64,000 nt of DNA from positions 212,979 to 276,978 of the IMG/VR virus record IMGVR_UViG_3300042923_000281; one strand, written 5' to 3'. A model generated the notes under the pieces. The model did not search any database. It was not told where the DNA came from and was given only the letters and a program-made list of their open reading frames with translations. Both the position numbers and the translations under genes were made by a program. Below, piece by piece: positions 3,825 through 45,309 of this stretch (its first letter is position 1; each line of letters starts with the position of its first letter).

Positions 3825-3833
3825 GGGTGCCTC

Positions 3834-19075: not shown

Positions 19076-20572
19076 TTAGAAATTGAAATTGCCAGTGTTG
19101 CTGAGAAGTGGGGACTCTTCGTAGTCATCGTTGTCGTTTGGACGACGGCCCGACCCGAGTTTGTCCACGATGTCAGTGAGCGAGGAGCTCATGGCACCGA
19201 TGGTGTCCTGATCGTCCACGATGACCGGCGCCACCAAGGAGTCACAGAAGACCGGGAACACGTCTTCGAACGGATCTTCGCCTTCCAGCTTGAGCCAGAT
19301 TTCGATGTCGTTGGACAGTCCCGCTTTAACGCTGATGTCGAACATGCAGTCAGGCCACGGCAGCATGTCATGGAACATCTCGGTGATGCAGCGCTCTTCG
19401 AACGCCATCAACGACCGATCCGTGATCTGCTTGCCAATGATCGGCAGGCACTGCGGGATGATCATGACTGCGTCACCCATGGCCGACATGTTGTCCGCCG
19501 TGAACTCGACGTACGCGATGTGGTGGAACGCCATGAACGCTGGCAACGCACGCGCCACTTGGATCGCAGCGATGGTGCTGTTGTCACGACCGGACCAGCC
19601 AGAACGGTTCTGGTAGTTACGGACTGTTTCAGGGCGTTCGAAGAACACCTTGACGTCGTCCCACATGTAGTCCGGGTTCATGGCGATCAGCTCGCCGTAG
19701 GTGATGAAGCCTTGCTCGAGGATGTTGGTCTCACGAGCAATGTCAGCCAGCACAGGAATGCTGCTCACGGTCTTCTCACGGACCTGAGAGCGTGCGTCTT
19801 TCAGGATCGACCCAGTGTCGCGGTCGAACTGATTGCCTTGGCCGAACATCTCGCCTTCATTCGCAGTTGCCAGCGCCTTGATCGAGCGGTGCAAGTAACG
19901 AGTGGAGGAGTCATTGAGGCGGTGAGACATCCGCAGGCCTTTACCGGTGAACCCATGACGCATGTCAAGGTAGTTCTCTTTCTCGGCACGGCGGTTGAAC
20001 GCGTTGGACACGACGTTCTTCGGGTTGTTGTGGAACACGTCTTCTGGACGCATCACCAACGTACCCGCTGACATCCGATCACGGCTGAAGTCCGGCAAGA
20101 CTTGCGGCGCAATCAAATGGTTGGAACTGGCAATCTGGGTCTGCCAACCACGGCGGGTCGGGGTATCCATGTAGCTCTGGTTCAGCTCGGTCACGGAGTT
20201 GAAGTACAACGCCATGCTCTCGTCAAGCTTGATACCGCGAATGCCTTGGGAAGCACCCACGTGGTCGGTGTAACCGGAGATCTCCAGGGTCCGGATGTCG
20301 GTACGGCTTTTGCGAACCAACACGGTCATCATGAACATGAAACGCTTCTCGCCCCAGCCACCGGCAATCAGGGCGGACCCTTGGTGCTTGGCAGCAGGAC
20401 GGATGATTCGACCCGCCACGCGGCTCAGGGCCGCTGGAGTCAGGTCTTCACCGCCGCGAGTGTCACGGTCCAGGATGCCGATCAATTCATCAGTGGCATC
20501 AGCGTAATAAGGACGGAGCTGCATGTCCTTGTAGCCCGAGCGCTCACGGAATACGAGATCAATTAGTTGCAT
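19076..20572 (-). CDS. picA: Probable phage-nucleus import factor PicA/Imp1 (phiKZ gp69-like)
   Basis: Directly downstream of the gp68-like subunit; about 500 aa; RPY...GWGEKRFMF...GYTD...YFNSV...RPEDVF pattern; GGGAG RBS before ATG 20572. Assignment is mainly synteny. Confidence 0.72.
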   Translation of the reverse strand: MQLIDLVFRERSGYKDMQLRPYYADATDELIGILDRDTRGGEDLTPAALSRVAGRIIRPAAKHQGSALIAGGWGEKRFMFMMTVLVRKSRTDIRTLEISGYTDHVGASQGIRGIKLDESMALYFNSVTELNQSYMDTPTRRGWQTQIASSNHLIAPQVLPDFSRDRMSAGTLVMRPEDVFHNNPKNVVSNAFNRRAEKENYLDMRHGFTGKGLRMSHRLNDSSTRYLHRSIKALATANEGEMFGQGNQFDRDTGSILKDARSQVREKTVSSIPVLADIARETNILEQGFITYGELIAMNPDYMWDDVKVFFERPETVRNYQNRSGWSGRDNSTIAAIQVARALPAFMAFHHIAYVEFTADNMSAMGDAVMIIPQCLPIIGKQITDRSLMAFEERCITEMFHDMLPWPDCMFDISVKAGLSNDIEIWLKLEGEDPFEDVFPVFCDSLVAPVIVDDQDTIGAMSSSLTDIVDKLGSGRRPNDNDDYEESPLLSNTGNFNF

Positions 20573-22124
20573 GGGTACGGCTCCCGATGGTGTTGTTGAC
20601 ATGAATGATCATGTCTGCTAGTTGTCGTCTGATGTCGCCCGAGATGTACATGTAGCCAGTCTGGGTCAACATCGGTACACGGTTGATAATGTCGCGAGGT
20701 GCATGTGGTTTCCAAGCCCGGCCGCTCATCCAGTCCACCACCATGTCAATGGCGGTCACTGCGACGTTGCCACGCTTGCCCGGTTCCTGACGTTTGGTTT
20801 CCTGACGCCAGTGCGGGTATTGCTTGTCCAAGATCTCGGCCTGGATCTTGGTGATCTTGTTGCGGGTTTCCGTCGGGATGTACGTTTCACCGTCATCGCT
20901 GATGTACTCTTCCGCCGAGACCAGCAGTGCCAGCTCATGGAAGCCCCAGTGATCGAGGATGGCCTGAGCCACACCCATCAGACGGAACTCCGTACGCTTG
21001 AGCAACAGCTCACGGGCTTCAGGCGAGATCGTCCGGATGACCCAGAAGATGATCGCCTTCTGGAAGTCTTCCACCTTGCGCTCTTCGTGACGAGAGCAGA
21101 TGGCGACACACTGCTGCACACGAGCAATGTCCAGAGTCGGGTCAGCACGTACCACGATGACTTGGGTGTTCTCACTGAACACTTCCAGCAACTGACGGTC
21201 GCCTTCGGTGATCTCGGTGGTTTGACCGTAGTCATCCCAGACCGACGAGTTATCCTCATCGCCTTTGTCCAGACTGCGCGAACGTTTGGCCTGTACCACG
21301 CCGGTGACGCTTTGGAAGCGACCATCCATGCGCAGGTGCGTGCCTGTCACGTAGTTGAACAGGATACGAGCCAGGCTGTCCCGATCCACCGGAGTGGACA
21401 GCGGCCCGATGGAGATCTTGCGGACTAATGCCATAGCCATCAAGTGACGCGGTACTTCTTCACTCGATAGACCGGCCATGACCATGGTCATGCTGATCTC
21501 TTTGTCCACCGATGCCTCGATGTACTCCATCATGCGGATATAAGGAGGCCATTGGTTCACACCGGCCAGCTCAATCAGCTTGACAGCTTCGGATTCCTTG
21601 TAACCGTTGCCGTGGGTAGACGCCACGTTTTGGATGTACATGCCCCAGATAGGCACGACCATCCGCAAGCCCAACGCCAGCGCTTGCAAGTCAATGTAGT
21701 CCGCCTTGATGTACGTACGACTGCGGTAGTTGCGACCGCGCTCGTTGAACTCTTCGAACTTTTCACTGACATCGCTTGGGATGTCCAAGCGAGCCTGCTC
21801 TACCCAGCCACGAACCACTGGCCATGTGATGATCTTGTACAGGTCTTTGACGACCGTCTCGATCTCGGCACGGATAAAGAAGGACGACCGAATCTCTTCG
21901 GACGACAGGTACTCGTTGACTTTGAGGTACAGTTCCCAAAGCTGGTATTGCGCCTCGGGGCTTAGACTCGCGAGGAAGTCATTGGTCTCCTTGAACAGTG
22001 TGTCACGGTTGATGATCGCAGCCGAATGGTAGCTGCCAGCCGACAGCTTCATTGAGTTGCCGCGGTGTTCCAGATTCAGGGATGTGATTCCCTTACTTGA
22101 CAGTTCATTAAGCTGAATCTGCAC
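20559..22124 (-). CDS. Non-virion RNAP promoter-specificity subunit (phiKZ gp68-like)
   Basis: About 520 aa, helical; RTY...DY...LR..VPIWG.Y pattern; synteny; GAGG RBS before GTG 22124. Confidence 0.78.
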   Translation of the reverse strand: MQIQLNELSSKGITSLNLEHRGNSMKLSAGSYHSAAIINRDTLFKETNDFLASLSPEAQYQLWELYLKVNEYLSSEEIRSSFFIRAEIETVVKDLYKIITWPVVRGWVEQARLDIPSDVSEKFEEFNERGRNYRSRTYIKADYIDLQALALGLRMVVPIWGMYIQNVASTHGNGYKESEAVKLIELAGVNQWPPYIRMMEYIEASVDKEISMTMVMAGLSSEEVPRHLMAMALVRKISIGPLSTPVDRDSLARILFNYVTGTHLRMDGRFQSVTGVVQAKRSRSLDKGDEDNSSVWDDYGQTTEITEGDRQLLEVFSENTQVIVVRADPTLDIARVQQCVAICSRHEERKVEDFQKAIIFWVIRTISPEARELLLKRTEFRLMGVAQAILDHWGFHELALLVSAEEYISDDGETYIPTETRNKITKIQAEILDKQYPHWRQETKRQEPGKRGNVAVTAIDMVVDWMSGRAWKPHAPRDIINRVPMLTQTGYMYISGDIRRQLADMIIHVNNTIGSRTHATN

Positions 22125-29990: not shown

Positions 29991-31904
29991 TTAGAAGCTA
30001 TTGCCGAAGCCAAAGCCGTTACCAACGCTACCACGCAGCGAACGTGCGCCATCACCAGTCACGCGGCGGCTCGAGAGCATGCCGTGAGTGAGGTCACCAC
30101 CGACGAAGTCACGGATGCGAGTGTTACCACGCAGGCGACGGTTGCCGAAGGTGTAGTGAGCCGAACGCTGGTCGATGTTGATTTTGCAATCAGCAACGGC
30201 CATGGCCAGCGCTTCGATGAACTGCGGGTTGACGAACGCCAGGTCTACGTAACGAGCGAACTTGACGTTGCTCGCACCGAGAGCGCTGGTCAGTTGGTCG
30301 TACTGCTCGCTGACGCGGATTTCAACGTCCAGGTCAACGCGGTCGATCACGTCCTGATAACGCAGGGCAGACTCGCCTTCGTCATTCGGGTTGGTGGCCA
30401 TCCAGCGCAGCAGGTCCCATTCACGCAGATCGCGCTCGTTGCCCTTCTCGTCGATCCAGGTGCCAGTCAGGTAACGAGCACCGGACATTTGCAGCGGGGT
30501 TTCGACGCCCAGTTCACGGGCACGGCGGGTGAAGTTGCCGTTGGTCAGACGGTCGGCGTAGTCGTACAGACGGCCGATGGCGTCCTTGTTGGCGCTGTCG
30601 TCAGTTGCAGCGTCGGACAGCAGGGAGGTGATCCAGCTGTTGTCGCCGCCTTCTTCGAGCTCGATAGCCCAGGCCAGGTTGTCGTCAACCAGGCTGAAGA
30701 AGTACTGAGCCCACTTGTGGGTGTCCAGCGACGCACGGTTGTCGAACTCGACCGGAGTCTTGTCCTGATCCGGGCCGAGGATGTTCAGCAGACCAGCGTC
30801 ACGGTGGTCGATCTCACCACGAGCAACATCGCCCGGCAGGTAAGTCTGAGCCCACGCTTGGTCTTTGGAGATGACCGACGCACCAGCCAGAGCCAGCAAC
30901 AGCAGCTCAGGGGTGATGCCGTTGGCGTTGGTGTCCATGCGGTTGATCACGTACATCGGAGTGAAGTACGGCTGATCACGGCGCTGGGTACGGGACCAAC
31001 GATCTTGTTCGACCGGCGGGGTGTACATGATGCTGACGTAACCGCCCAGGTTGGCCAGGCCAACAGGGATGTTCTGGTCGCCTTTGCGCACGATGCCGGC
31101 AACGGTAACGGCCAGGTCGGAACGACGCGGCAGACCGTCGGCGGTCATGACTTCACGGCCAGACAGGTCGACGTTGATTTCCAGAGTCGACTGCTTGCTC
31201 AGCCAGTCCAGCGAGAAGAACAGGTCAGGCTGGAACAGGTTGCTGTAGATCGCTGCCAGAGCGGCCTGGGCGTAGAACACGACCTGACGCACTTCGGTGT
31301 TTTCCGGATCGTTGAAGTCAACCTTGTGGCTCACTACACGCCAGCCGGCACGCACGATTTCAACGCTACGGCGCTGGCCTTCGAACGCCTTCTTCGCGAT
31401 TTCGTCAACCAGAGCCAGGTAGCTCTCGGTGATGTAGTCGGAAGCGATGATCGGCAGCGGGTAGGTGCGGTGGTTGATCTCGACGTTACGCACGGTGGCG
31501 TCGTCGGTCATGCTCGAGGACAGAGCCAGGGCGGAAACCAGAACCTTGACGGTGCCGTTGTCTTCGACCGGGTATGCCAGGATCACAGAGCTGATGCTCA
31601 CGTTGTGCTCGGAAGCTTCCAGACCCAGAACTTGGATCTTGGAGAGGTCGATCAGGCCGGCGCCTGCAACCTGACGCTCTGGATCGAACCAGTGCTTAAC
31701 CGACTTAACAGCGTTGACCAGAACTTCGCCGCTGATGCGACGGGACATCGGTGCGCCGAGCAGGCGGTTGATGTCCAGCAGACCGGCGGTGGTCGCTTGG
31801 GATTCACGAGCCGGGCGCTCAGCACGCTGCTCTTGGCGCGGAGCTTCGCGGGAGGTACGCTCGTTGCTCGAAGCGGAGTTGTCGATGTCGTCTTGTACAG
31901 CCAT
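29991..31904 (-). CDS. chmA: Phage nuclear shell protein chimallin (phiKZ gp54-like)
   Basis: 637 aa, immediately upstream of beta'-N; G.P.RSD..V and G.W.D..G..RDLR..D patterns; aromatic/Gly C-terminal tail; strong AAGGAG RBS; own promoter and terminator. Confidence 0.88.
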   Translation of the reverse strand: MAVQDDIDNSASSNERTSREAPRQEQRAERPARESQATTAGLLDINRLLGAPMSRRISGEVLVNAVKSVKHWFDPERQVAGAGLIDLSKIQVLGLEASEHNVSISSVILAYPVEDNGTVKVLVSALALSSSMTDDATVRNVEINHRTYPLPIIASDYITESYLALVDEIAKKAFEGQRRSVEIVRAGWRVVSHKVDFNDPENTEVRQVVFYAQAALAAIYSNLFQPDLFFSLDWLSKQSTLEINVDLSGREVMTADGLPRRSDLAVTVAGIVRKGDQNIPVGLANLGGYVSIMYTPPVEQDRWSRTQRRDQPYFTPMYVINRMDTNANGITPELLLLALAGASVISKDQAWAQTYLPGDVARGEIDHRDAGLLNILGPDQDKTPVEFDNRASLDTHKWAQYFFSLVDDNLAWAIELEEGGDNSWITSLLSDAATDDSANKDAIGRLYDYADRLTNGNFTRRARELGVETPLQMSGARYLTGTWIDEKGNERDLREWDLLRWMATNPNDEGESALRYQDVIDRVDLDVEIRVSEQYDQLTSALGASNVKFARYVDLAFVNPQFIEALAMAVADCKINIDQRSAHYTFGNRRLRGNTRIRDFVGGDLTHGMLSSRRVTGDGARSLRGSVGNGFGFGNSF

Positions 31905-33986: not shown

Positions 33987-34290
33987 CGGCGCTCCTCAAA
34001 GCTCTTAGGGTTTCAGTCAGCAACTTAGCCACCGGGACACTCAAGCCCGTGTGGCGACGGATCGCTGTCTCTGCCAGTACGTACACCGATACACCGCTGA
34101 TAACAGACTGCGTGACAGCCACATCCATCAGTTCAGCGAATACTTCAGCCACACACCGAGGTTTGAACGGCTCGGCAATGAGGGCTGAGGTGACGCAGTG
34201 TGCGCTGTAGTCGCCGGTGAGATCGCCCCAAGTGGTCAACAATTGGGGCTTTCTCTCAGGGAACTTGAGGATCTTGCACTCAGTCGGCAA
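33955..34290 (-). CDS. Hypothetical protein (about 111 aa)
   Basis: GGAGAGG RBS inside the end of the polymerase gene, TTG start 34290 (MPTECKILKFP...). Confidence 0.6.
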   Translation of the reverse strand: MPTECKILKFPERKPQLLTTWGDLTGDYSAHCVTSALIAEPFKPRCVAEVFAELMDVAVTQSVISGVSVYVLAETAIRRHTGLSVPVAKLLTETLRALRSADEAQRDRLNP

Positions 34291-36571
34291 GCCAGTCCTC
34301 TCCATCATCTTCTTCGTACTCCTCATCGTCATCCTCGTCGATCTTGAGGATGATACTGTTTGCGTCTGTTGGGTCAGGTTGCAGGTTGACTTCGCCACGT
34401 GGGGTGTAGATGTCGCTGATCAAGCGGACGTACTTGCTGTCCACTTGGAAGATCCCCAGCGTCTCGAGGATCATGTAGAAGGACTCCAGGATCTCGTAGG
34501 TGAGACGACGGACGTCGATCATGGCCATGACCTCGTCTGGCATCCCGATGCCCGAGAGGATCGACAGAGGCAGCATGAGCGTGCCCATCTTGTCCTTGCC
34601 AGCCCGTTGGCAGTACTCGCGCAGACGTTCACCCATGTCCTTGTCCGTCTTGTCCACGTGAGCCATCCAGTCCTGCATGTCGGTCTTGTTATTGATCGCC
34701 AGCGGAACCTTAATCACGGAGAAGGGTGGGCTTTCTACATGGCCGTACTTCGGTGCAAAGACGTGCTCCCAGAAGTGATAGTGACGGTAGTTCGTCTTCT
34801 CACGGAACGGGTCTTCCTTGTTCATGTTCGGGTACGATTCCTGAACCTGTGCAGACTTCAGGTAACGGTGTTCCCCGGACTTGATCGAGGTGTAGATGTC
34901 TTGCTCCAAACGCCACACCAGCAGGTACAGCTCTTCCAACGTGAACTGACGGTTCTCATCCGCGCGGGTCATGACTTCCTTCATGAACGCCTTGGCCTGC
35001 TTGATGATTGCTACCGGTACAGTGGAGGAACGCAGGGCTACGCCTTTGATCTCCATCTCGTAGTCACGGTACACACGGCCTTCACGAGCACTCATGAACG
35101 CGTAGTAGTGCTTCGCCCGGCTGGTCAAGGTAAAGACTGGGAAGGCGTACTCGTTCTTCATGGTCAGACGGTGCAGGTCTTCCTGAATCACCCCCATGTT
35201 TGCCGAGAGCTTCGCCAGTACGTGCACGATACATTGGCAAGCCACGTACGTCGTGGTGTACCAGATCCCGTCACCTTCACGGCTACGCACGTCACTGCCG
35301 GTGTACCACGTTACCCACTCTTGGGTGGTGAAGATCGTGGAGTCGGTGTCAGACGCCAGTACCACACGGCGCAAGATGCCCTTGACGTTTGCCACGGTTG
35401 GAGCCAACAGCACAGGCGTGAGGAACACACGGATGAACTGGAAGTAGTCCTGCAAGGTGTTCTGGATGTTCGCTGAGCTCTTGGCAACCAAGGCCAGCTC
35501 TGCGGTCATCCCTTTCTCCTTCATGGAGTCAAAGTCTTCACCACGGGTGATGTCAGCGTTGAGGTACGTGGCCAACATCTTGGTGTCGTCATCGAACTTC
35601 TTGCTGCGCAGCATCTCGAAACCGTCTTCCACTTCCATGGAGTCGTTACGAGGCTCGTGCTTGATGATGCGGTCCATGAACCCACGGACAAACCCATCGT
35701 TCAGCTGAGCAATGTGGTACAGGTCGCCCGTGTACATCACAATGGCCCGTTCCAGCGGGGTCAGCTTCTCAAGCAGATCAACGATCTTCTGGAAGTTAGC
35801 CTCGTTGCGCCAGTACAGGTCGGTCGAACGCTTGATGCACGCTGCGGCTTGCTCGGTGGTTGGGTACACGAAGCCGCAGTTGTCCATGGCCTGACGGAAC
35901 TCCTCGTGCGGTTGGCTCTTCACCAGCGCGAGGATATTCGCTATCGTTATCTTGGGGGACCAATAGTGTCTTGATCCCGCCAAGAGCTTCTCGTTACTGG
36001 CGTTACCGTAACCGGTGGCCGAACGGCACATGGAGGTCAGGCTGGAGTGGCCCGATTTGACGTACAGGATGTTGCCGGTGAAGCCGTGCATGCCAGACAG
36101 CGAGTTAATCGCGATCTTCTTGGCGTTCTGCTCGGCGTCCTTGATCTTCTCAAGGGTCTCGTCCCCTGCTACCTGAGCAAGGAACATCTCGTTCTTGGCT
36201 TTCTTACGACCTGCGATACCCGATTCAACGAACTTGGCCGAAGGGGACTTCAACACCTTCGGGTTCTCGTAGCACACCATCGATGGACTGATGATGCGGT
36301 TGCTCTCGGTCACCGTCTTGACGTAGCTGAGCAGGGTCATTTCAGTCTTGACCCGGTTGCCCGGTGATTCTTGTTTCAGGACCAGCATGTTCGGATCACG
36401 AAGCGGGTACTTCCCACCTCGGGAGAGTGTACGCTTCAGGAAAGCCAAGCATTTGTCTTCTGGCTGACCGGTCATCCGATGCAGGTAATGGGTATTCTGT
36501 TCGAAGTACCCCTTTAGCAGATCGAGGTCACGGACATAGGCTTCCTTCGGAAGTACAAACGGATTTTCCAT
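34280..36571 (-). CDS. Family-B DNA polymerase, polymerase-domain subunit (phiKZ gp50-like)
   Basis: Q...KIAINSLSG (motif B), ASDTDS (motif C), KHYYA, EIKGV; ATG 36571 MENPF; no exonuclease domain (split enzyme). Confidence 0.92.
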   Translation of the reverse strand: MENPFVLPKEAYVRDLDLLKGYFEQNTHYLHRMTGQPEDKCLAFLKRTLSRGGKYPLRDPNMLVLKQESPGNRVKTEMTLLSYVKTVTESNRIISPSMVCYENPKVLKSPSAKFVESGIAGRKKAKNEMFLAQVAGDETLEKIKDAEQNAKKIAINSLSGMHGFTGNILYVKSGHSSLTSMCRSATGYGNASNEKLLAGSRHYWSPKITIANILALVKSQPHEEFRQAMDNCGFVYPTTEQAAACIKRSTDLYWRNEANFQKIVDLLEKLTPLERAIVMYTGDLYHIAQLNDGFVRGFMDRIIKHEPRNDSMEVEDGFEMLRSKKFDDDTKMLATYLNADITRGEDFDSMKEKGMTAELALVAKSSANIQNTLQDYFQFIRVFLTPVLLAPTVANVKGILRRVVLASDTDSTIFTTQEWVTWYTGSDVRSREGDGIWYTTTYVACQCIVHVLAKLSANMGVIQEDLHRLTMKNEYAFPVFTLTSRAKHYYAFMSAREGRVYRDYEMEIKGVALRSSTVPVAIIKQAKAFMKEVMTRADENRQFTLEELYLLVWRLEQDIYTSIKSGEHRYLKSAQVQESYPNMNKEDPFREKTNYRHYHFWEHVFAPKYGHVESPPFSVIKVPLAINNKTDMQDWMAHVDKTDKDMGERLREYCQRAGKDKMGTLMLPLSILSGIGMPDEVMAMIDVRRLTYEILESFYMILETLGIFQVDSKYVRLISDIYTPRGEVNLQPDPTDANSIILKIDEDDDEEYEEDDGEDWLAD

Positions 36572-36592
36572 CAGTTGGGCCCTTGATACGGC

Positions 36593-36638
36593 AAAAGAAA
36601 AAGAAAGGGAGGAGTAGCTCATAGTAGAGTACCCCTCC
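36593..36638 (-). terminator. Terminator-like hairpin just upstream of the polymerase start
   Basis: GGAGGGGTA...TACTCCTCC then CTTTCTTTTTCTTTT. Confidence 0.7.
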
Positions 36639-36642
36639 GTTT

Positions 36643-37131
36643 TTATTCACTGAAATTCACGAACGTGTAAATGACAGTGTCTTCTTCTCGCATCGGTACA
36701 ACCTCGGTGAGAATGAAGCCATCTTCCTGCGCTTGGATAAGCCGCAACGTGTCAATGCCATGGGGCTTGATGCCGTTGTTGTGGAAGTTGACCACCTCCT
36801 CGAGGAAGTCCTGTGCAACAGCATCCTCGAACGTGTTGTAGATGTCGTCCATGTGGGACTCTGTCACGTCCGTCTCACCATTCTCCTCACGGATCATGAT
36901 GTCCACGTGAAGGGCAAGGGAGCACATGGCGAACATGTTCTCTTTAAGCTCTTCGGACAGGTGGTGCTTGTGGACGACCTTGTCGACCGCGTCGAGGAAG
37001 TCGCCGTAGACCGCGAAGAAGTCTCCGTCGTAGGGAAGAAGAATGTGGTTCTCCGTCCCCGCTTCGAAGTGCAGCCGCGGACGGCGACGAGGAGGCCACT
37101 TAATAGTCGATCGTGAAATCCTTGATGCCAT
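36643..37131 (-). CDS. Acidic small protein, member of the tandem array
   Basis: ORF; start uncertain (ATG 37131). Confidence 0.7.
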   Translation of the reverse strand: MASRISRSTIKWPPRRRPRLHFEAGTENHILLPYDGDFFAVYGDFLDAVDKVVHKHHLSEELKENMFAMCSLALHVDIMIREENGETDVTESHMDDIYNTFEDAVAQDFLEEVVNFHNNGIKPHGIDTLRLIQAQEDGFILTEVVPMREEDTVIYTFVNFSE

Positions 37132-37492
37132 TTTGGAGAAGTGCCTCGCGCACGAGTTGTTCGGTTGTGTCACTGACCTTGGCGATGGTGATAACCAGCT
37201 TGCGATCAGTGATAACCTCAATGGTGTTTAGGTCGATCCACGGCACACCAAGGACTTCAATAGCCCCGTTGCCGTAGCGCAACTTCACGTAACTGTACGA
37301 ACCTGCCGACTGGGGCAGGGTGGTCAGGTAGTTCTTCACCTGACTGTGCTTGGCCTTGACATCCGAAATCAGCTGGGCTGTATCGAGGTCAAGGTCCGCG
37401 GCAACAATGGTGACGTTATCGCGGTTGGCACCCAAGACGTTCGGTGCCGTGGTGTTGAAGCGAACCGTCTTACCTTTGAAGTCGGTGATCAT
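37100..37492 (-). CDS. Conserved chimallivirus beta-rich protein (phiKZ gp49-like)
   Basis: GAGGAA RBS; F.T.AP.VLG and VLGVPWI motifs; upstream of the polymerase. Confidence 0.75.
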   Translation of the reverse strand: MITDFKGKTVRFNTTAPNVLGANRDNVTIVAADLDLDTAQLISDVKAKHSQVKNYLTTLPQSAGSYSYVKLRYGNGAIEVLGVPWIDLNTIEVITDRKLVITIAKVSDTTEQLVREALLQNGIKDFTIDY

Positions 37493-37790
37493 GCGGATGT
37501 TCCTCAATGAGTAGTACGAATGTCCCTTCTGTGTCCACTACTTCTACGTCAACCCACCGCCGGTGTGAGAGCGTGCTGAAAGAGCGGTCTTGGCGGATTC
37601 GAGCCAACCATTCGCCATGGTGCTTCAGGTCTTCCCTGAGGGCGATGAAGAATGCATGCAGGATCAGATCCCGCACGTAACGTCGAACCGCAGCAGGCAG
37701 TTCTTCGTCGGGAGGCAAGTCTGGGTCGAGGGAGTAACAGACCTCAGGCAGGAGGTCAGCCAGCACCTCAGATGTGTTGATGACAATCAT
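37470..37790 (-). CDS. Small protein, tandem array member
   Basis: AAGGA RBS; 106 aa. Confidence 0.75.
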   Translation of the reverse strand: MIVINTSEVLADLLPEVCYSLDPDLPPDEELPAAVRRYVRDLILHAFFIALREDLKHHGEWLARIRQDRSFSTLSHRRWVDVEVVDTEGTFVLLIEEHPHDHRLQR

Positions 37791-37799
37791 GGGTGGTCC

Positions 37800-38156
37800 T
37801 TAGCGCACAACGACGATCAAGGCCTCTTCGTCTGGGTAGTACGCGGCGTGTACAACGCTACGTCGATCCAGTCCAGGAGTTGCACGGTCTATCGTACAGT
37901 AGAGGTTGATCATAGCATTTCTCAGCGCTATGAAGTTGTCTTGGGCATCTTCCTGCTCTTCTCGGCGGGAACCGGGATAAACGGGGTACATCGGTTTGCA
38001 GTAGTTGTCCACTGCGACCTCACCCCTCCGGCACCAATCTGCATAGAACGAATACATCTCGTCTATGACATACGAGTGGTCCATCACTTGGGACAAGTCG
38101 GTTAGGAAGGCTTCATGGATCTCGCCCCCATTGAAGATCATGTTACGCTCAGCCAT
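37800..38156 (-). CDS. Small protein, tandem array member
   Basis: 118 aa; overlaps the upstream stop. Confidence 0.75.
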   Translation of the reverse strand: MAERNMIFNGGEIHEAFLTDLSQVMDHSYVIDEMYSFYADWCRRGEVAVDNYCKPMYPVYPGSRREEQEDAQDNFIALRNAMINLYCTIDRATPGLDRRSVVHAAYYPDEEALIVVVR

Positions 38157-38499
38157 TGGATATTCTCACAACGATTGAGCCATCCAACGCATCGTAAGCC
38201 ACCAGTTCAGTGAACAGATGCTCAAGACTACGGAAGCGGCTCAGTTGGTCTGCAAAGTCAGAGAATACGGGTATGACCAGCTCGTAAGCTTCATCGACTT
38301 CCAGTATTAACCGGTCACGAAGGACATTCCGATCCGCAGACTCTCTCATCCAATAACTGAGTACTCGTCCATATTCAATCGCGATCGTGTTCTTGATCAC
38401 CCCTCGTAACACTGAGGACACCGTTACGGCCAGCAGCTTTCGATTGATACTTTGGAGCCAGCTTCCTTCGACGGGGATGCACAATAGTAGCGGGGTCAA
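38149..38499 (-). CDS. Small protein, tandem array member
   Basis: GGAG then TTG 38499 (MTPLLLCIPVEG...); start inferred. Confidence 0.65.
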   Translation of the reverse strand: MTPLLLCIPVEGSWLQSINRKLLAVTVSSVLRGVIKNTIAIEYGRVLSYWMRESADRNVLRDRLILEVDEAYELVIPVFSDFADQLSRFRSLEHLFTELVAYDALDGSIVVRISNG

Positions 38500-38839
38500 C
38501 GGTGGCGTCTCCAATTGATCTGGGGGTAATTTCGACAACGGCAAGATCATCATCCAGTACCTCCACCAAATGAAAGTCGCCGAGCTGGTCGACGAAGTGG
38601 CTTGTCGAATGCGACAGGTCTTCAACGACGTTAGCGATTACACTGGAGAGCTCCGACTGTATCGACGGAGGTAACCGATCATTCATCATCGGTTCGATCA
38701 GCAGGTCAGAAGTTCGATGGAGCCGTCCAGCGGCGACGGACAGGTACTCGAACAGTTGCTCGAGCGACAGGCCGGTGGCGTCCAGTACACGTGCCACGTT
38801 CAGTAAGAACTCGCCACTGGTTTCCAAGGTGATAATCAC
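38375..38839 (-). CDS. Small protein, tandem array member
   Basis: GAGAG then GTG 38839 (MIITLETSGE...); start inferred. Confidence 0.65.
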   Translation of the reverse strand: MIITLETSGEFLLNVARVLDATGLSLEQLFEYLSVAAGRLHRTSDLLIEPMMNDRLPPSIQSELSSVIANVVEDLSHSTSHFVDQLGDFHLVEVLDDDLAVVEITPRSIGDATVDPATIVHPRRRKLAPKYQSKAAGRNGVLSVTRGDQEHDRD

Positions 38840-39221
38840 TTTGGTCTCTCGAGGCTTGGATGTAGAGGTCTTCGTCGAACTCGGCGTAGACAACCTTGAG
38901 GAGGCTGAATGGCTTCCGAGTGCGCCAATTCTGAGCTGGTCCAGAAGATTTATCGGTGGTCTCATAAAAAGTCCTGAGGTTCTCAAAGAGGGTATAAAAG
39001 GTGGAGTAGATGTCATCGCACCACCACATCAATTCCTCTTCCATATCCGGGTTGTTCTCGTTGATGTCCTCCAAGTAGAAAGAATCGTCGAAGACAAAAT
39101 ACGCGATAGCGGCATAGAGTAGTGCTGAGGCACCAATGTGATCGGCTAATTTCTTGCCGAGCATATCGAATGCCTCATCGTACGGTAGATTCAAAGCGAT
39201 TGAGCTTATTCCAGTCGACAA
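38706..39221 (-). CDS. Acidic small protein, tandem array member
   Basis: GAGGTG RBS, TTG start. Confidence 0.7.
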   Translation of the reverse strand: MSTGISSIALNLPYDEAFDMLGKKLADHIGASALLYAAIAYFVFDDSFYLEDINENNPDMEEELMWWCDDIYSTFYTLFENLRTFYETTDKSSGPAQNWRTRKPFSLLKVVYAEFDEDLYIQASRDQSDYHLGNQWRVLTERGTCTGRHRPVARATVRVPVRRRWTAPSNF

Positions 39222-39666
39222 CTCGTCTCACCTCTATTACCATTACGCCGTCACAGTATTCAAGAACACGACAGTCGGAACAGGCGTTCTTGAGCAGGCC
39301 CATAAACGCGGCCTGCATGATACGGTTGACAGCGCGGATATTCATGCGGTTGGCGCGGTGCACAGATTCGGGCACCCTGTTAATCCATGAACGGCCGGCT
39401 CTAGTGTCGAGTACATCTCGGGCAATGATGGCACAGTTGATCATTTCGACCATGGGGATCATGATGCCAATCTTGCCCAATCGCCTGTAATGGCGTTTGA
39501 ACTCATCATGATCCATGGGCGATTCGACCAGTACGTACTGGATGCGGTCAGGCGCTGGGCCGACTGTCACCTTCGACACTGTGTACGGCTTATAGGCCTG
39601 AGGATATAAGTTCTTCGAGCGCTCGACGTAACCGTTCAGGATAGAAATCTCCCTGCTTTTGGGCAT
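39175..39666 (-). CDS. Small protein, tandem array member
   Basis: AAGGAAG RBS, ATG start. Confidence 0.7.
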   Translation of the reverse strand: MPKSREISILNGYVERSKNLYPQAYKPYTVSKVTVGPAPDRIQYVLVESPMDHDEFKRHYRRLGKIGIMIPMVEMINCAIIARDVLDTRAGRSWINRVPESVHRANRMNIRAVNRIMQAAFMGLLKNACSDCRVLEYCDGVMVIEVRRVVDWNKLNRFESTVR

Positions 39667-40033
39667 GGTGATAGTCTTCCTTTATGCGGTGGGAGGGTTT
39701 TGGCACCGGGCGTTTGCGTTGCTCCACGAACAAGGTCTCGTTCAATGGATGGTACTCCAGATTAACGAAGTACTCTTTAAGATCGGTTCCAGTCTCTACC
39801 AACCGGATGAACTGATCTGCAATGTCGTCCACCGGGGAGTAATCAGAGAGGTTACCCCCCAATGATTCGATCACATCGCCTACCAAGTTGGCAGACTCTG
39901 TCCGGTTGTATGAGTTGACCAAGGTGGCCACGGCTTTAGTCACAGTCGAACTGAAGCACGAGCCATGCTGTTCGAGAAACATCTCTCTGAGCATGGTCTC
40001 GATTTCACCTGTCGCGACAAGGAATGTTGTCAT
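39590..40033 (-). CDS. Small protein, tandem array member
   Basis: AGGTG RBS, ATG start. Confidence 0.75.
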   Translation of the reverse strand: MTTFLVATGEIETMLREMFLEQHGSCFSSTVTKAVATLVNSYNRTESANLVGDVIESLGGNLSDYSPVDDIADQFIRLVETGTDLKEYFVNLEYHPLNETLFVEQRKRPVPKPSHRIKEDYHHAQKQGDFYPERLRRALEELISSGL

Positions 40034-40044
40034 CTGAGCACCTG

Positions 40045-40653
40045 TTACTGACGGCTGAGCTGCTCCATGTACATGCGCTTGACTTCGTCCTTGATGACTG
40101 GGTTACTGATGTTCGAGAACACTTCATTGATGCAGTAGTCGATGTACTCGGCCACTTCATCCAGATCATCAATTTCCTGCACCATCTTCGGCGGGGTCAT
40201 GCGCTTGACTTGACGGAGCAAGTCCTTATACCGTTCTACGAGCTGGTCACTTTTTACTTCAATGATCAGGTCTTCGGTGAACTTGATGTGACGAAACTCG
40301 ACGGTGCGATTACCTACAGTGCGCAGGATTGTGTCGATCATCGGGTCCATGGTCATCATGATGGCCATGTAGTGTTCGTCGCATTCGTTGCACAGCTCGT
40401 CAATATCCTCCTCGGACATTGCCTTCACGGGGTAGCCCAACGCTACGACCAATTCCTCGAGCGGGTCAGGCTTCCTGCGGATGTGCCTCATCGACATGCG
40501 GATGTAGGCTTTCGCAAAAGCTGCTGCTGCGTTTACCAGCGCCTCATTCCGGGCCGGACCACTGCTCTCCACATTGTGACCACGGGGCCACAAGTCCAGT
40601 GTATCGTCGAGGTAAGAAACTACCTCGGAAATCGGTACTGAGATGTTCTGCAC
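40045..40653 (-). CDS. Protein of the tandem array with a C-terminal helical extension
   Basis: GGAG RBS, GTG start. Confidence 0.78.
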   Translation of the reverse strand: MQNISVPISEVVSYLDDTLDLWPRGHNVESSGPARNEALVNAAAAFAKAYIRMSMRHIRRKPDPLEELVVALGYPVKAMSEEDIDELCNECDEHYMAIMMTMDPMIDTILRTVGNRTVEFRHIKFTEDLIIEVKSDQLVERYKDLLRQVKRMTPPKMVQEIDDLDEVAEYIDYCINEVFSNISNPVIKDEVKRMYMEQLSRQ

Positions 40654-40667
40654 GGCTTCACTCCAAG

Positions 40668-41003
40668 CTAAGTCTTTTTTCTTTTGACCATGACCAGTAT
40701 CTCATTAGTCATTTCGATCGCTATCACGTAGCGTTGCAAATGCGCGACTACGTTTCTGTCCAGCTGATCGACGAATGTCATTCCACACCGTTCTTGTAGA
40801 GCGCGGATCTGTCGGTACTGCCTTTCCAACGATTTGCACCGTGGGGTAGAAGAGACTAAGGTCATGAAGGTTTTCTCAACCAACTCTCGCTCGATCACGT
40901 ACTGCCATGCAAGCAACGATAGTTCTCCACCCTCATCAAGGGTACCGATGAGGAACGAAACGTCGAACACGAGCGCTGTAGGGCCCTTAAATTCGATGTT
41001 CAT
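40668..41003 (-). CDS. Small protein, first gene of the tandem array
   Basis: GAGGGG RBS, ATG start. Confidence 0.75.
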   Translation of the reverse strand: MNIEFKGPTALVFDVSFLIGTLDEGGELSLLAWQYVIERELVEKTFMTLVSSTPRCKSLERQYRQIRALQERCGMTFVDQLDRNVVAHLQRYVIAIEMTNEILVMVKRKKT

Positions 41004-41047
41004 ACATGTCCCCTCAAAGGATACCGGGTGTCTGTATAAAAAGACCT

Positions 41048-41087
41048 AAAAAATAACTCACTGAGAGCAGGGGGTTCCCTGCTCTCG
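41048..41087 (-). terminator. Terminator separating the upstream operon from the array
   Basis: GAGAGCAGGG-AACC-CCCTGCTCTC...TTATTTTTT. Confidence 0.75.
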
Positions 41088-41097
41088 TTATGGAGTG

Positions 41098-41307
41098 TCA
41101 CCCCAGGCTCGGCCAGCCGCCACCACCCGGTGGATCGGTCTTGTTCAGCGCAGGACCGTGCTTGTCGAAGTCATAGCGCTCTTCCGGGAACATGTGATGC
41201 CATTCGCCGTGCTTGCAACGACCACATTCGTAGCCAGGGCCAGTTTGCTGAGTAGCATGAATATCGTCGACGTTCTGGCACGTCTCACATTCGAAGACAG
41301 TAGTCAT
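41098..41307 (-). CDS. Small zinc-ribbon protein (69 aa)
   Basis: CETC...CGRC; AAGGAAGG RBS. Confidence 0.75.
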   Translation of the reverse strand: MTTVFECETCQNVDDIHATQQTGPGYECGRCKHGEWHHMFPEERYDFDKHGPALNKTDPPGGGGWPSLG

Positions 41308-44272: not shown

Positions 44273-45262
44273 TTACCAAACCAGGCCGGAGGCCGTTGGC
44301 TTGTCCTTGTCGCCGGTGAACGCCACTGCATCAGTCGCAGCTTGTTCTTGATCGGCGATTTCACGCTCGAGGTCTTCAACGCGCTTACGCAGTTCGCCCA
44401 TGGAGCCGTTTTCGATACCGAAGAACAGACTGCCTTTGGCTTGTGCGATGGATGGCATTACGCCGTAGGTGCTGTAAGGCACGAACATTTCCGGCGTTGG
44501 GTCGGTGGCTTCACGCAGCAGGTAAGCAGAGGCCAGAGCACCACTGCGCATCAGCTTGGTGAAGTCTTCGATGTTGTCGGAGACGTGCATGCGGCACAGT
44601 TGCGCGCGAGCCTTGGTCGACTTGGTGAAGTTGAACAGCGACTTCAAGTCTGCGGTGTCCAGGCCGTGGTTACGGCGAGAGACCAGAGCAGCCAAAGCGG
44701 TGATCATCAGGTGCGCTTCGTTGTCCACTGACTTGTCGGTCATCTGGCCAGGCTTGTTGAAGCCCAGATGGATGATGCCAGGCATGCCGCACGACCGCGA
44801 GATGTTGTCCAGGGTCTTCACGCCACCGATGGTGTTCTCGGCGTTGCGAATGGCCTGTTGAGCCCAGACCACGATACCCATGGCCATGTGACCATCGTCC
44901 AGCAGCTTCTTCAGGATCAGAGGACCCGATACCGAACCCGTACCGCCAGCCAGCGTGAAGACCACAACAGTCATGTCCGCTGGTGGGAACTTGCGCAGGA
45001 TGTCAGGCACTGCTTTGGCGATGGCTTCAGCGTTTTCAGGACGCAGACCGCCGGAACCGTCCAGGCCGTCGAACAGCCAGGTCTTGTCAACCAGACGATC
45101 ATCGAGGTTGGAGTCAGAGGTGTCCACGAAGCAGACGTCGATGTTTGCAACGTCAGCGCTGTGACCAGCTTCCAGGTATTCCTTAGCGATGTTCACACCG
45201 CCGCCACCACAGCCGATGATGCGCATGGTGCCTACAGGACGATTAGAGAGACCGTGACTCAT
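44273..45262 (-). CDS. phuZ: Tubulin-like spindle protein PhuZ
   Basis: IGCGGGGVN, DTSDSN, GSG, LAGGTGS tubulin signature, LDTAD T7 loop; GAGG RBS, ATG 45262. Confidence 0.95.
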   Translation of the reverse strand: MSHGLSNRPVGTMRIIGCGGGGVNIAKEYLEAGHSADVANIDVCFVDTSDSNLDDRLVDKTWLFDGLDGSGGLRPENAEAIAKAVPDILRKFPPADMTVVVFTLAGGTGSVSGPLILKKLLDDGHMAMGIVVWAQQAIRNAENTIGGVKTLDNISRSCGMPGIIHLGFNKPGQMTDKSVDNEAHLMITALAALVSRRNHGLDTADLKSLFNFTKSTKARAQLCRMHVSDNIEDFTKLMRSGALASAYLLREATDPTPEMFVPYSTYGVMPSIAQAKGSLFFGIENGSMGELRKRVEDLEREIADQEQAATDAVAFTGDKDKPTASGLVW

Positions 45263-45309
45263 TGTGACTACCTCATTGAGGGTTGTTGATTTGGGGGTTG
45301 CACACAATG

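What the first reader, a model, noticed from the sequence alone, without database searches (positions are those of the whole stretch)
36643..41003. Tandem array of about 10 highly divergent small paralogues upstream of the DNA polymerase
Seen: ten consecutive minus-strand ORFs of about 105-200 aa, bounded by terminators at 41048-41087 and 36593-36638, have little residue identity but the same layout. Each has a short hydrophobic N-terminal strand (ALVFDVS, NISVPIS, TFLVATG, YVLVESP, IALNLPY, IITLETS, LLCIPVE, NMIFNGG, MIVINTS, HILLPYD), then 2-3 amphipathic, mostly acidic helices, then a beta-hairpin with a D/E/N/G turn (IAIEMTNEILVMV, HIKFTEDLIIEV, LEYHPLNETLFVE, VLEYCDGVMVIEV, YAEFDEDLYIQA, LVEVLDDDLAVVEI, VAYDALDGSIVVRI, AYYPDEEALIVVV, VEVVDTEGTFVLLI, VVPMREEDTVIYTF). 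Only the gp49-like gene (37100-37492) breaks the pattern. Inference: one fold amplified and diversified, either as a hetero-oligomer or as a library of adaptors. From memory (needs checking), small genes in the equivalent phiKZ interval were implicated in cargo-specific nuclear import with Imp1/PicA. The array could therefore be a set of specificity adaptors for the phage nucleus or of anti-defence factors.
Basis: partly seen in the sequence, partly recalled or inferred. Interest (0 to 1): 0.8.

Follow-up and report, generated by a model that had tools for sequence, protein, structure and literature searches.

The report
Import-adaptor-like small gene operon
Ten small, fast-evolving genes in front of the DNA polymerase of a nucleus-forming jumbo phage form one conserved operon that matches the phiKZ block holding the nuclear-import adaptors Imp2 and Imp4, so they are good candidates for further cargo adaptors, although a common origin of all ten is not shown.

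Summary
The ORFs, the quoted peptides and both flanking terminators are real. The interval is one terminator-bounded operon of eleven minus-strand genes: W1-W9, a phiKZ gp49 homologue and W10. It lies between PhuZ and polB in a phage that also encodes ChmA and Imp1/PicA.

It is not a recently amplified array. Each gene is a separate family with one orthologue, in the same order, in about 20 related contigs and in Pseudomonas phage pPa_SNUABM_DT01.

No BLAST, HMM or profile-profile comparison links the ten families.

Only W8 and W9 could be modelled (pLDDT 94 and 88). Both show the predicted layout of an N-terminal strand, helices and a C-terminal hairpin. Neither resembles anything in PDB, AlphaFold DB or the ESM Atlas. 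In BFVD they match almost only small Chimalliviridae proteins, several per genome. Eight matches were traced by accession to genes one to four places upstream of gp49. These include 201phi2-1 gp80 (Imp4 family) and Phabio gp64 (Imp2 family).

W9 is probably the Imp4 counterpart and W8 the Imp2 counterpart. The block is collinear with phiKZ gp44-gp48.

An old, diversified family of cargo-specific import adaptors is the best reading, at moderate confidence. Eight of the ten folds remain untested.

The parts
41047..41086 (-). Intrinsic terminator of the upstream zinc-ribbon gene; marks the 5' boundary of the operon
   Evidence: A 10-bp GC-rich stem followed by a U-run, z = -3.66. Nine related loci carry different but self-complementary stems ahead of a conserved TTATTTTTT (read by eye; RNAalifold failed on this alignment).
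40668..41003 (-). W1, 111 aa, pI 7.8
   Evidence: ORF. A GAGGGG Shine-Dalgarno motif lies before the ATG. There are 14 distinct orthologues in the same position. No Pfam or PHROG hit.
40045..40653 (-). W2, 202 aa, GTG start, acidic; the hairpin is followed by about 60 further C-terminal residues
   Evidence: A 202-aa BFVD entry with a DT01-type accession, taken by length to be the DT01 orthologue PA10_00135, is a weak Foldseek hit of the W8 model: probability 0.38, TM 0.38. The accession itself was not mapped.
39590..40033 (-). W3, 147 aa, acidic; strongly conserved C-terminal helix after the hairpin
   Evidence: Codon-phase divergence shows its own frame under constraint right to the stop.
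39175..39666 (-). W4, 163 aa, basic (pI 9.7); the first 25 codons are overprinted on the 3' end of W3
   Evidence: The ATG is conserved in all 12 loci aligned. Constraint in W4's own frame begins just after the W3 stop. The DT01 annotation starts 50 codons too late.
38706..39221 (-). W5, 171-aa ORF with a TTG start; the conserved core is about 126 aa and ends at the hairpin. The tail is a variable read-on across W6
   Evidence: Beyond about residue 120 the W6 frame dominates. This gene is not annotated in DT01, but tblastn finds it there at 65% identity.
38375..38965 (-). W6, 196 aa counted from the conserved ATG; a 40-residue Ser/Thr/Pro-rich leader overprinted on W5, an acidic core, and a variable tail across W7
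38149..38553 (-). W7, 134 aa; possible counterpart of phiKZ gp46
   Evidence: Conserved ATG with a GGAGGT Shine-Dalgarno motif. The ESM Atlas holds exactly this 134-aa product. hhalign against the gp46 family gives p = 0.0037 over 76-98 columns, which is suggestive only. Not annotated in DT01.
37800..38156 (-). W8, 118 aa, acidic; counterpart of the gene two places upstream of gp49 (phiKZ gp47, Imp2)
   Evidence: AlphaFold2 pLDDT 94.5, strand-helices-hairpin. BFVD hits mapped by accession: MORTIMER_222, the orthologue of Ea357_214 (probability 0.98, TM 0.61); RP12 ORF008 (0.96, 0.57); PHABIO_64 of the Imp2 family (0.44, 0.39).
37470..37790 (-). W9, 106 aa, acidic; counterpart of the gene directly upstream of gp49 (phiKZ gp48, Imp4)
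   Evidence: AlphaFold2 pLDDT 88. BFVD hits: Ea357_215 (E = 2.5e-3, TM 0.64/0.68) and 201phi2-1 gp80 (probability 0.89, TM 0.55), both mapped by accession. gp80 clusters with phiKZ gp48 by jackhmmer. A DPDxP loop and a D..G hairpin turn are shared.
37100..37492 (-). gp49 homologue, 130 aa; a core Chimalliviridae gene, annotated in some records as a DNA-polymerase-associated SH3 protein
   Evidence: tblastn finds it in 144 phage records, including PHIKZ049. HMM E-values run from 1e-18 to 1e-25 against gp49 of phiKZ, PhiPA3, 201phi2-1, RSF1 and pEa_SNUABM_37.
36643..37131 (-). W10, 162 aa counted from the conserved ATG, very acidic; the fastest-evolving member. Absent from the more distant relative L022 and from phiKZ
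36593..36638 (-). Intrinsic terminator closing the operon, with a conserved loop GCTCTATTATGAGC
   Evidence: Fold z = -3.05. Five of eight pairs show compensatory changes across 10 loci.
34280..36571 (-). Family B DNA polymerase (phiKZ gp50 counterpart), with corrected start; context only
   Evidence: The conserved ATGGAAAATCC (MENPF...) start lies downstream of the terminator in all loci.
19079..20602 (-). Imp1/PicA orthologue; context, the proposed docking partner
   Evidence: 27.7% identity over 506 residues to PHIKZ069, E = 5e-40.
29991..31904 (-). ChmA (nuclear shell) homologue; context
   Evidence: tblastn to phiKZ gp54, E = 8e-16, and to Noxifer gp50, E = 7e-26.
44273..45307 (-). PhuZ tubulin homologue; context, the upstream boundary of the syntenic block
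   Evidence: tblastn to phiKZ gp39, E = 1e-24.

Best explanation
The interval is one operon, bounded by terminators on both sides. Its genes are tightly linked, with eight overlaps or near-abutments. It is the counterpart of the phiKZ gp44-gp49 block that lies between PhuZ and the DNA polymerase in all Chimalliviridae examined.

It encodes ten small, mostly acidic proteins plus the gp49 homologue. Each small protein appears to be built as one strand, several helices and a closing beta-hairpin. Each is a distinct orthologous family held in fixed order.

W9 corresponds to Imp4 (phiKZ gp48) and W8 to Imp2 (gp47).

The most likely function of the set is that of cargo-specific adaptors or co-factors. 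Each would bind one client, a phage or host replication or transcription protein, and present it to the Imp1/PicA importer at the ChmA shell. Rapid sequence change on a kept scaffold would then reflect tuning to clients.

Shown here: the operon structure, the orthology pattern, the synteny with phiKZ, the folds of W8 and W9, and their structural neighbours.

Inferred: a shared fold for the other eight, a common origin by ancient duplication, and the adaptor function itself.
For: Operon and starts.

One orthologue per family, in the same order, in about 20 loci and in DT01.

Synteny. A run of 5-10 small genes upstream of gp49 and polB is present in phiKZ, PhiPA3, 201phi2-1, Phabio, Noxifer, RSF1, RSL2, RP12, pEa_SNUABM_37, Ea35-70, Miami and L022.

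Known function in phiKZ. Imp2 is orf47 and Imp4 is orf48, both called cargo-specific adaptors (bioRxiv 10.1101/2024.03.27.586873; bioRxiv 10.64898/2026.09.21.753271). Neither tolerates transposon insertions (PMC12676376).

Folds. Confident models of W9 and W8 share the same order of elements.

Structural neighbours. Nearly all of the first 42 BFVD matches of W8 are Chimalliviridae small proteins. At least six genomes contribute two or more distinct proteins. Nine targets appear in both the W8 and W9 lists. Eight matches were traced by accession to array genes one to four places upstream of gp49.

Specificity control. The same models find nothing comparable among 2.3 million cellular fold clusters, the PDB or the ESM Atlas.

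Context. Imp1/PicA, ChmA and PhuZ are all present in the window.

Faint sequence signal. The W8 and W9 profiles align their hairpins in register, p = 0.043.
Against: No significant sequence or profile similarity links any two of the ten families. The best of 55 pairs has p = 0.006 and HHalign probability 6%.

The W9 family does not reach phiKZ gp48 by HMM or hhalign (p = 0.09), nor W8 the gp47 family (p = 0.19).

Cross-position Foldseek matches have only moderate TM-scores of 0.37-0.61.

W8 and W9 do not retrieve each other's DT01 orthologue within the listed matches.

Eight of the ten were never modelled.

Some BFVD hits are not array genes. A Noxifer 136-aa hit is not NOXIFER_38, and the Miami 150-aa and RP12 193-aa hits match no array gene by length.

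The adaptor function is known only for the phiKZ proteins. Nothing here tests binding, localisation or import.
Confidence: 0.45

Rival explanations
1. The ten proteins are unrelated small families that merely share a simple strand-helices-hairpin architecture. They sit in a conserved replication-module operon and act as accessory factors of the DNA polymerase or replisome, together with the gp49 SH3-like protein. Import phenotypes of the phiKZ homologues would then be specific to those two genes or indirect.
For: There is no detectable homology among the families. They are co-transcribed with gp49, which some records annotate as polymerase-associated, and lie directly upstream of polB in every Chimalliviridae examined. 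The order-specific sequence signal is marginal, p = 0.048. Cross-position TM-scores are mostly 0.4-0.6.
Against: The W8 model retrieves proteins from four different array positions in other phages. It retrieves almost nothing from 2.3 million cellular fold clusters. That is hard to explain by a generic architecture. The two characterised members of the block are import factors, not replisome parts.
Confidence: 0.3
2. The array encodes subunits of one hetero-oligomeric assembly. The closing hairpins and N-terminal strands would pair between subunits, and the coupled, overlapping genes would ensure matched synthesis.
For: Gene overlaps of 8-260 nt suggest translational coupling. Gene number and order are fixed across the clade. 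Edge strands are available for strand pairing in both models.
Against: Gene number differs between genera, from 5 to 10, and W10 is missing in L022. In phiKZ, imp2 and imp4 mutants have different, cargo-specific phenotypes rather than one shared phenotype.
Confidence: 0.15
3. The array is a set of anti-defence or host-takeover proteins diversifying under an arms race.
For: The proteins are small, acidic, of unknown function and fast-evolving: 26-58% identity between the window and L007, where polB keeps 78%.
Against: Strict one-to-one orthology and fixed order across the clade, with no gain, loss or shuffling. The block lies in the conserved core between PhuZ and polB. The phiKZ counterparts imp2 and imp4 lack transposon insertions, unlike dispensable accessory genes. 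No PADLOC-type or other family hit was sought or found that would support this reading.
Confidence: 0.05

Closest known systems
Imp4 (phiKZ gp48/orf48) and its family (PhiPA3 gp045, 201phi2-1 gp80, Phabio gp65)
   Same: W9 occupies the same place, directly upstream of gp49 and polB. It is of similar size and acidic. It has the same order of structural elements, a proline-containing xPDxP loop after the first helix, and a D..G hairpin turn. Its model matches 201phi2-1 gp80: Foldseek probability 0.89, TM 0.55.
   Different: There is no significant sequence or profile similarity to phiKZ gp48. W9 is 20-40 residues shorter. The published function, TopA import, is untested for W9. The source paper describes Imp4 as confined to Pseudomonas phiKZ-like phages, so this would widen its range.
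Imp2 (phiKZ gp47/orf47) and its family (PhiPA3 gp044, 201phi2-1 gp79, Phabio gp64)
   Same: W8 occupies the same place, two genes upstream of gp49. It has the same strand-helices-hairpin order. Its model matches the proteins at that position in RP12 and Agricanvirus (probability 0.96-0.98), and weakly Phabio gp64.
   Different: W8 has 118 aa, against 170-287 in the Imp2 family. Profile comparison is not significant, p = 0.19. The direct structural match to an Imp2-family member is weak (TM 0.39).
Paralogous gene families of phiKZ-like phages, such as the inner-body family gp93/162/163 and the baseplate family gp131-135
   Same: Tandem or dispersed sets of related genes inside Chimalliviridae genomes.
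   Different: Those families are recognisable by sequence (for example a shared Pfam domain) and encode virion proteins. The array here has no detectable sequence relationship between members and is non-structural.
Eukaryotic import adaptors that bridge cargo to a transport receptor (importin-alpha, snurportin); a comparison from general knowledge
   Same: The proposed logic is the same: small cargo-specific proteins hand clients to one central import factor.
   Different: No homology, a different fold, and a protein-lattice shell instead of a nuclear pore. This is a functional analogy only.

Membership tests
Imp4 (phiKZ gp48) family, tested for W9 | Gene lies directly upstream of the gp49 homologue and polB | tested here: met
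   Window order is W9, gp49, W10, polB. phiKZ order is gp48, gp49, gp50.
Imp4 (phiKZ gp48) family, tested for W9 | Significant sequence or profile similarity to phiKZ gp48 or its recognised homologues | tested here: not met
   The extended W9 HMM gives no hit to gp48, PhiPA3 gp045, 201phi2-1 gp80 or Phabio gp65. hhalign gives p = 0.09, with only the hairpins aligned. The exhaustive search of 1.84 billion proteins stops at about 100-aa relatives.
Imp4 (phiKZ gp48) family, tested for W9 | Same fold as a family member | tested here: inconclusive
   Foldseek against 201phi2-1 gp80 gives E = 0.12, probability 0.89, TM 0.55/0.47. The match to the same-position protein Ea357_215 is stronger: E = 2.5e-3, TM 0.64/0.68.
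Imp4 (phiKZ gp48) family, tested for W9 | Required for import of a specific cargo (host TopA in phiKZ) | not testable with these tools
   This is a genetic and microscopy assay.
Imp2 (phiKZ gp47) family, tested for W8 | Gene lies two places upstream of gp49 | tested here: met
Imp2 (phiKZ gp47) family, tested for W8 | Significant sequence or profile similarity to phiKZ gp47 homologues | tested here: not met
   HMM E above 2. hhalign p = 0.19.
Imp2 (phiKZ gp47) family, tested for W8 | Same fold as a family member | tested here: inconclusive
   PHABIO_64: probability 0.44, TM 0.39. Proteins at the same position that have no sequence link to Imp2 match better: RP12 ORF008 at 0.96 and 0.57, MORTIMER_222 at 0.98 and 0.61.
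Imp2 (phiKZ gp47) family, tested for W8 | Itself imported into the nucleus and required for Nlp1 import | not testable with these tools
   describes the assay.
Tandem array of paralogues with one fold, tested for all ten | Detectable pairwise or profile similarity between members | tested here: not met
   (the last gives p = 0.043 for W8 against W9).
Tandem array of paralogues with one fold, tested for all ten | Same order of secondary-structure elements | tested here: inconclusive
   Met for W8 and W9 by AlphaFold2. For the other eight there is only a crude propensity profile, which is compatible.
Tandem array of paralogues with one fold, tested for all ten | Structural superposition of members (TM above 0.5) | tested here: inconclusive
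   No tool superposes two models directly. Indirectly, the two lists share nine BFVD targets, and W8 matches array genes at four positions with TM 0.37-0.61. There is no direct W8-W9 orthologue hit within the listed matches.
Tandem array of paralogues with one fold, tested for all ten | Copy-number variation or recent duplicates, as expected of an actively amplifying array | tested here: not met
   Gene number and order are the same in about 20 loci. Numbers differ only between genera.
gp49 family (core Chimalliviridae gene), tested for ORF 37100-37492 | Sequence homology to PHIKZ049 | tested here: met
   (E = 3e-19).

The most novel reading that the evidence does not exclude
All the small genes between PhuZ and gp49 in Chimalliviridae, ten here and six in phiKZ including Imp2 and Imp4, descend from one ancestral strand-helices-hairpin protein. 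Together they form the phage nucleus's repertoire of cargo-specific import adaptors, each docking a different client onto a different interface of Imp1/PicA. The fold would be confined to this virus family. The array would be the main genetic determinant of what may enter the phage nucleus.
Probability: 0.25. Interest if true: 0.85.

Novelty: new variant of a known kind. Interest (0 to 1): 0.6.

Why it matters
How the phage nucleus chooses its cargo is an open question. Only a handful of adaptors are known, all from phiKZ: Imp2, Imp4, Imp5 and Imp7. They are described as restricted to close Pseudomonas phage relatives.

If the whole conserved block upstream of gp49 and polB belongs to the same class, three things follow. 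It supplies a defined list of candidate adaptors, eight new families in this clade. It extends Imp2 and Imp4 counterparts to distant Chimalliviridae through position and structure where sequence fails. And it gives a cultured system, pPa_SNUABM_DT01 on P. aeruginosa, in which each gene can be tested.

The work also corrects gene models: two unannotated genes and two truncated ones in DT01, and the polB start.

Tried and rejected
Searches that found nothing:
- Pfam and PHROGs scans of all ten proteins gave no hits.
- megablast and tblastn against 50,697 phage records found only pPa_SNUABM_DT01 for the array genes.
- All-vs-all BLASTP, phmmer and hhalign gave nothing significant.
- Family HMMs against array proteins of five other phages detected only gp49.
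- PDB, AlphaFold DB clusters and ESM Atlas shape searches with both models gave no meaningful match.
- Language-model look-alikes for W2 and W7 scored 0.46-0.55, which is uninformative.

Tests that were weak or flawed:
- hhalign of ten W profiles against 33 same-position families from other phages put W2-Ea357_214, W9-Ea357_215 and W7-gp46 on top at p = 0.002-0.004. That is about what 330 comparisons give by chance, although two of the three pairs share a position.
- Control families from the flanks were too few and too shallow, so the comparison of W x W with W x control (p = 1e-6) is confounded. Reversed W profiles also score high. I do not use that result.
- A strict pattern for the C-terminal hairpin failed even on W8 and W9. 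A looser one found only 2 of 10 in the window, and 27% against 11% in other phages, p = 0.03. This is weak and post hoc.
- Matching BFVD hits to genes by length alone proved unsafe. A Noxifer 136-aa hit is not NOXIFER_38. Only accession-mapped hits are counted.

Readings rejected:
- Recent amplification and an anti-defence library, because of the fixed one-to-one orthology.
- A programmed frameshift joining W5 and W6. I considered it, but a conserved ATG with a Shine-Dalgarno-like motif and the codon-phase pattern are explained by overlapping genes.

Full report
**What the window is.** It is identical to IMG/VR contig UViG_3300042923_000281, 277 kb. The nearest cultured relative is Pseudomonas phage pPa_SNUABM_DT01, at roughly 60% amino-acid identity in this region. 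The window encodes homologues of PhuZ (44273-45307), ChmA (29991-31904) and Imp1/PicA (19079-20602; 27.7% identity over 506 residues to PHIKZ069, E = 5e-40). It therefore comes from a nucleus-forming Chimalliviridae phage.

**Checking the observation.** All ten minus-strand ORFs, the gp49-like ORF and every quoted peptide are present.

The two bounding hairpins are real terminators.
- 41047-41086 folds with z = -3.7, and 36593-36638 with z = -3.1. Each is followed by a U-run.
- Both are kept in relatives through compensatory changes.
- The polB-side alignment also shows that polB starts at the conserved MENPF codon (36571), not at 36622. That puts the terminator in an intergenic gap.

**Gene models.** Stop-to-stop alignments across 12 loci, conserved start codons and Shine-Dalgarno motifs give these products.

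| Gene | Coordinates | Length |
|---|---|---|
| W1 | 40668-41003 | 111 aa |
| W2 | 40045-40653 | 202 aa |
| W3 | 39590-40033 | 147 aa |
| W4 | 39175-39666 | 163 aa |
| W5 | 38706-39221 | 171 aa, conserved core about 126 |
| W6 | 38375-38965 | 196 aa |
| W7 | 38149-38553 | 134 aa |
| W8 | 37800-38156 | 118 aa |
| W9 | 37470-37790 | 106 aa |
| gp49 homologue | 37100-37492 | 130 aa |
| W10 | 36643-37131 | 162 aa |

Neighbouring genes overlap by 77, 47, 260, 179, 8, 23 and 32 nt. Divergence by codon position shows that inside the overlaps the upstream gene's frame carries the constraint. The tails of W5 and W6 beyond their hairpins are variable read-on. In W4, W6, W7 and W10 the 'N-terminal' strand therefore follows an overprinted leader. 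Eight of the ten proteins are acidic.

**Not a young array.** tblastn finds exactly one orthologue of each gene, in the same order, upstream of polB in about 20 related contigs and in DT01. DT01 has two of these genes unannotated and two truncated. Identity between the window and L007 is 26-58% for the array against 78% for polB. These are ten fast-evolving but stable families with no copy-number turnover.

**Sequence tests of paralogy.**
- There are no Pfam or PHROG hits.
- All-vs-all BLASTP and phmmer give nothing.
- hhalign of the family profiles gives at best probability 6% and p = 0.006 among 55 pairs.
- Real profiles beat reversed ones by only 1.1 bits, Wilcoxon p = 0.048.
- The deeper W8 and W9 profiles align their C-terminal 35 residues in register with the modelled hairpins, but only at p = 0.043.

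As shown next, though, sequence methods also miss relationships that structure supports.

**Structures.** Only two predictions were allowed. I deepened the alignments first: 41 homologue clusters for W9 and 56 for W8, all from this clade.
- W9: pLDDT 88, with E2-6, helices at 8-21, 33-46 and 53-72, then E78-84 and E90-96.
- W8: pLDDT 94.5, with E4-9, helices at 11-21, 31-56 and 65-92, then E101-107 and E112-117.

In BFVD the picture differs.
- After its DT01 orthologue, W9 hits a 100-aa Ea35-70 protein (E = 2.5e-3, TM 0.64/0.68), a Psa21 protein, and a 128-aa 201phi2-1 protein (probability 0.89, TM 0.55).
- Nearly all of the first 42 matches of W8 are small Chimalliviridae proteins. At least six genomes supply two or more distinct proteins. 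Nine targets are shared with the W9 list.

Exact look-ups tie UniProt identifiers to genes. Positions are counted in genes upstream of gp49.

| BFVD identifier | Gene | Position | Hit by |
|---|---|---|---|
| W6ARH3 | Ea357_215 | 1 | W9, W8 |
| B3FK55 | 201phi2-1 gp80 (Imp4 family) | 1 | W9, W8 |
| A0A2H5BKW7 | MORTIMER_222, orthologue of Ea357_214 | 2 | W8 |
| A0A1L7N0I7 | RP12 ORF008 | 2 | W8 |
| A0A1Y0SW36 | PHABIO_64 (Imp2 family) | 2 | W8 |
| A0A1L7N1A8 | RP31 orthologue of RP12 ORF009 | 3 | W8 |
| A0A1Y0SUY9 | NOXIFER_39 | 4 | W8 |
| A0A1Y0SY73 | PHABIO_62 (gp45 family) | 4 | W9 |

The best hits of each model are thus the proteins at the same position. Weaker hits fall on other array positions. 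This is evidence for one fold class recurring along the array.

The caveats are these:
- TM-scores are moderate, 0.37-0.61.
- W8 and W9 do not retrieve each other's DT01 orthologue among the listed matches.
- Some hits are not array genes.
- Eight window proteins remain unmodelled.

**Link to known biology.** In phiKZ the order is PhuZ (gp39)..., gp43, gp44, gp44.1, gp45, gp46, gp47, gp48, gp49, gp50 (polB). orf47 is Imp2 and orf48 is Imp4, both cargo-specific import adaptors that work with Imp1. Neither tolerates transposon insertions.

A run of 5-10 small genes in the same place occurs in every Chimalliviridae genome I examined. jackhmmer groups phiKZ gp48 with PhiPA3 gp045, 201phi2-1 gp80 and Phabio gp65, and gp47 with their Imp2 homologues.

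W9 shares three things with this family and with the 26 distant relatives found by the exhaustive search. These are a short first strand, an xPDxP loop, and a D..G turn in the hairpin. Sequence statistics do not reach phiKZ gp48. W7 against the gp46 family gives p = 0.0037, which fits collinearity but proves nothing.

**Conclusion.**
- The phiKZ recollection is right.
- W9 and W8 are probably the Imp4 and Imp2 counterparts.
- The wider claim of one amplified fold is plausible but shown for only part of the array. If true, the duplication is ancient rather than ongoing.
- The best mechanistic reading is a set of cargo-specific adaptors feeding Imp1/PicA.
- A set of unrelated replication-module accessory proteins is the main rival.

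Noticed in passing
window 36571-36650: The longest polB ORF starts at 36622, but that ATG lies in the loop of the terminator hairpin. The start conserved in all relatives is the MENPF codon at 36571. The hairpin loop (GCTCTATTATGAGC) and the AATAAAAAC just before the stem are nearly invariant across 10 loci while the stem co-varies. The element may therefore do more than terminate, for example act as a promoter or a translational operator for polB.
   Followed up: partly
window 38375-39666 and 37100-37131: The gene overlaps are unusually long: W3/W4 77 nt, W4/W5 47 nt, W5/W6 260 nt, W6/W7 179 nt and gp49/W10 32 nt. Each downstream gene starts at a conserved ATG inside the upstream gene. Divergence by codon position shows the upstream frame dominating, so the leaders of W4, W6, W7 and W10 are overprinted sequence.
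   Followed up: yes
L001 (pPa_SNUABM_DT01, MW735835) 5180-6270 and 3665-4252: The GenBank annotation lacks the W5 and W7 orthologues, which tblastn finds at 65% and 59% identity. It also starts the W4 and W10 orthologues 50 and about 40 codons late.
   Followed up: yes
window 41098-41307 (minus strand): A 69-aa protein with two CxxC pairs (zinc-ribbon-like) lies just upstream of the operon's terminator. It is conserved in 15 distinct versions among the related loci and in DT01 (PA10_00133).
   Followed up: no
window 41004-41046 and the same place in L003-L019: Between the upstream terminator and the W1 start there is a conserved TATC.TGTAGGGGGA block. Its GGGGGA is the Shine-Dalgarno motif. 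The TATC..TGTA part could be the operon's promoter, but I did not compare it with known phiKZ promoter classes.
   Followed up: no
L022 4111-10013: In this more distant relative (polB 55% identical), PhuZ directly abuts a run of ten small genes that ends in recognisable W8-like and W9-like genes and gp49. There is no W10 between gp49 and polB. W10 is therefore a clade-specific addition.
   Followed up: partly
AlphaFold DB hit of the W8 model: The only cellular-proteome match with high probability is an uncharacterised 131-aa protein, A0A7W8PCM5 (probability 0.97, TM 0.51). It may be a jumbo-phage sequence inside a bacterial assembly.
   Followed up: no
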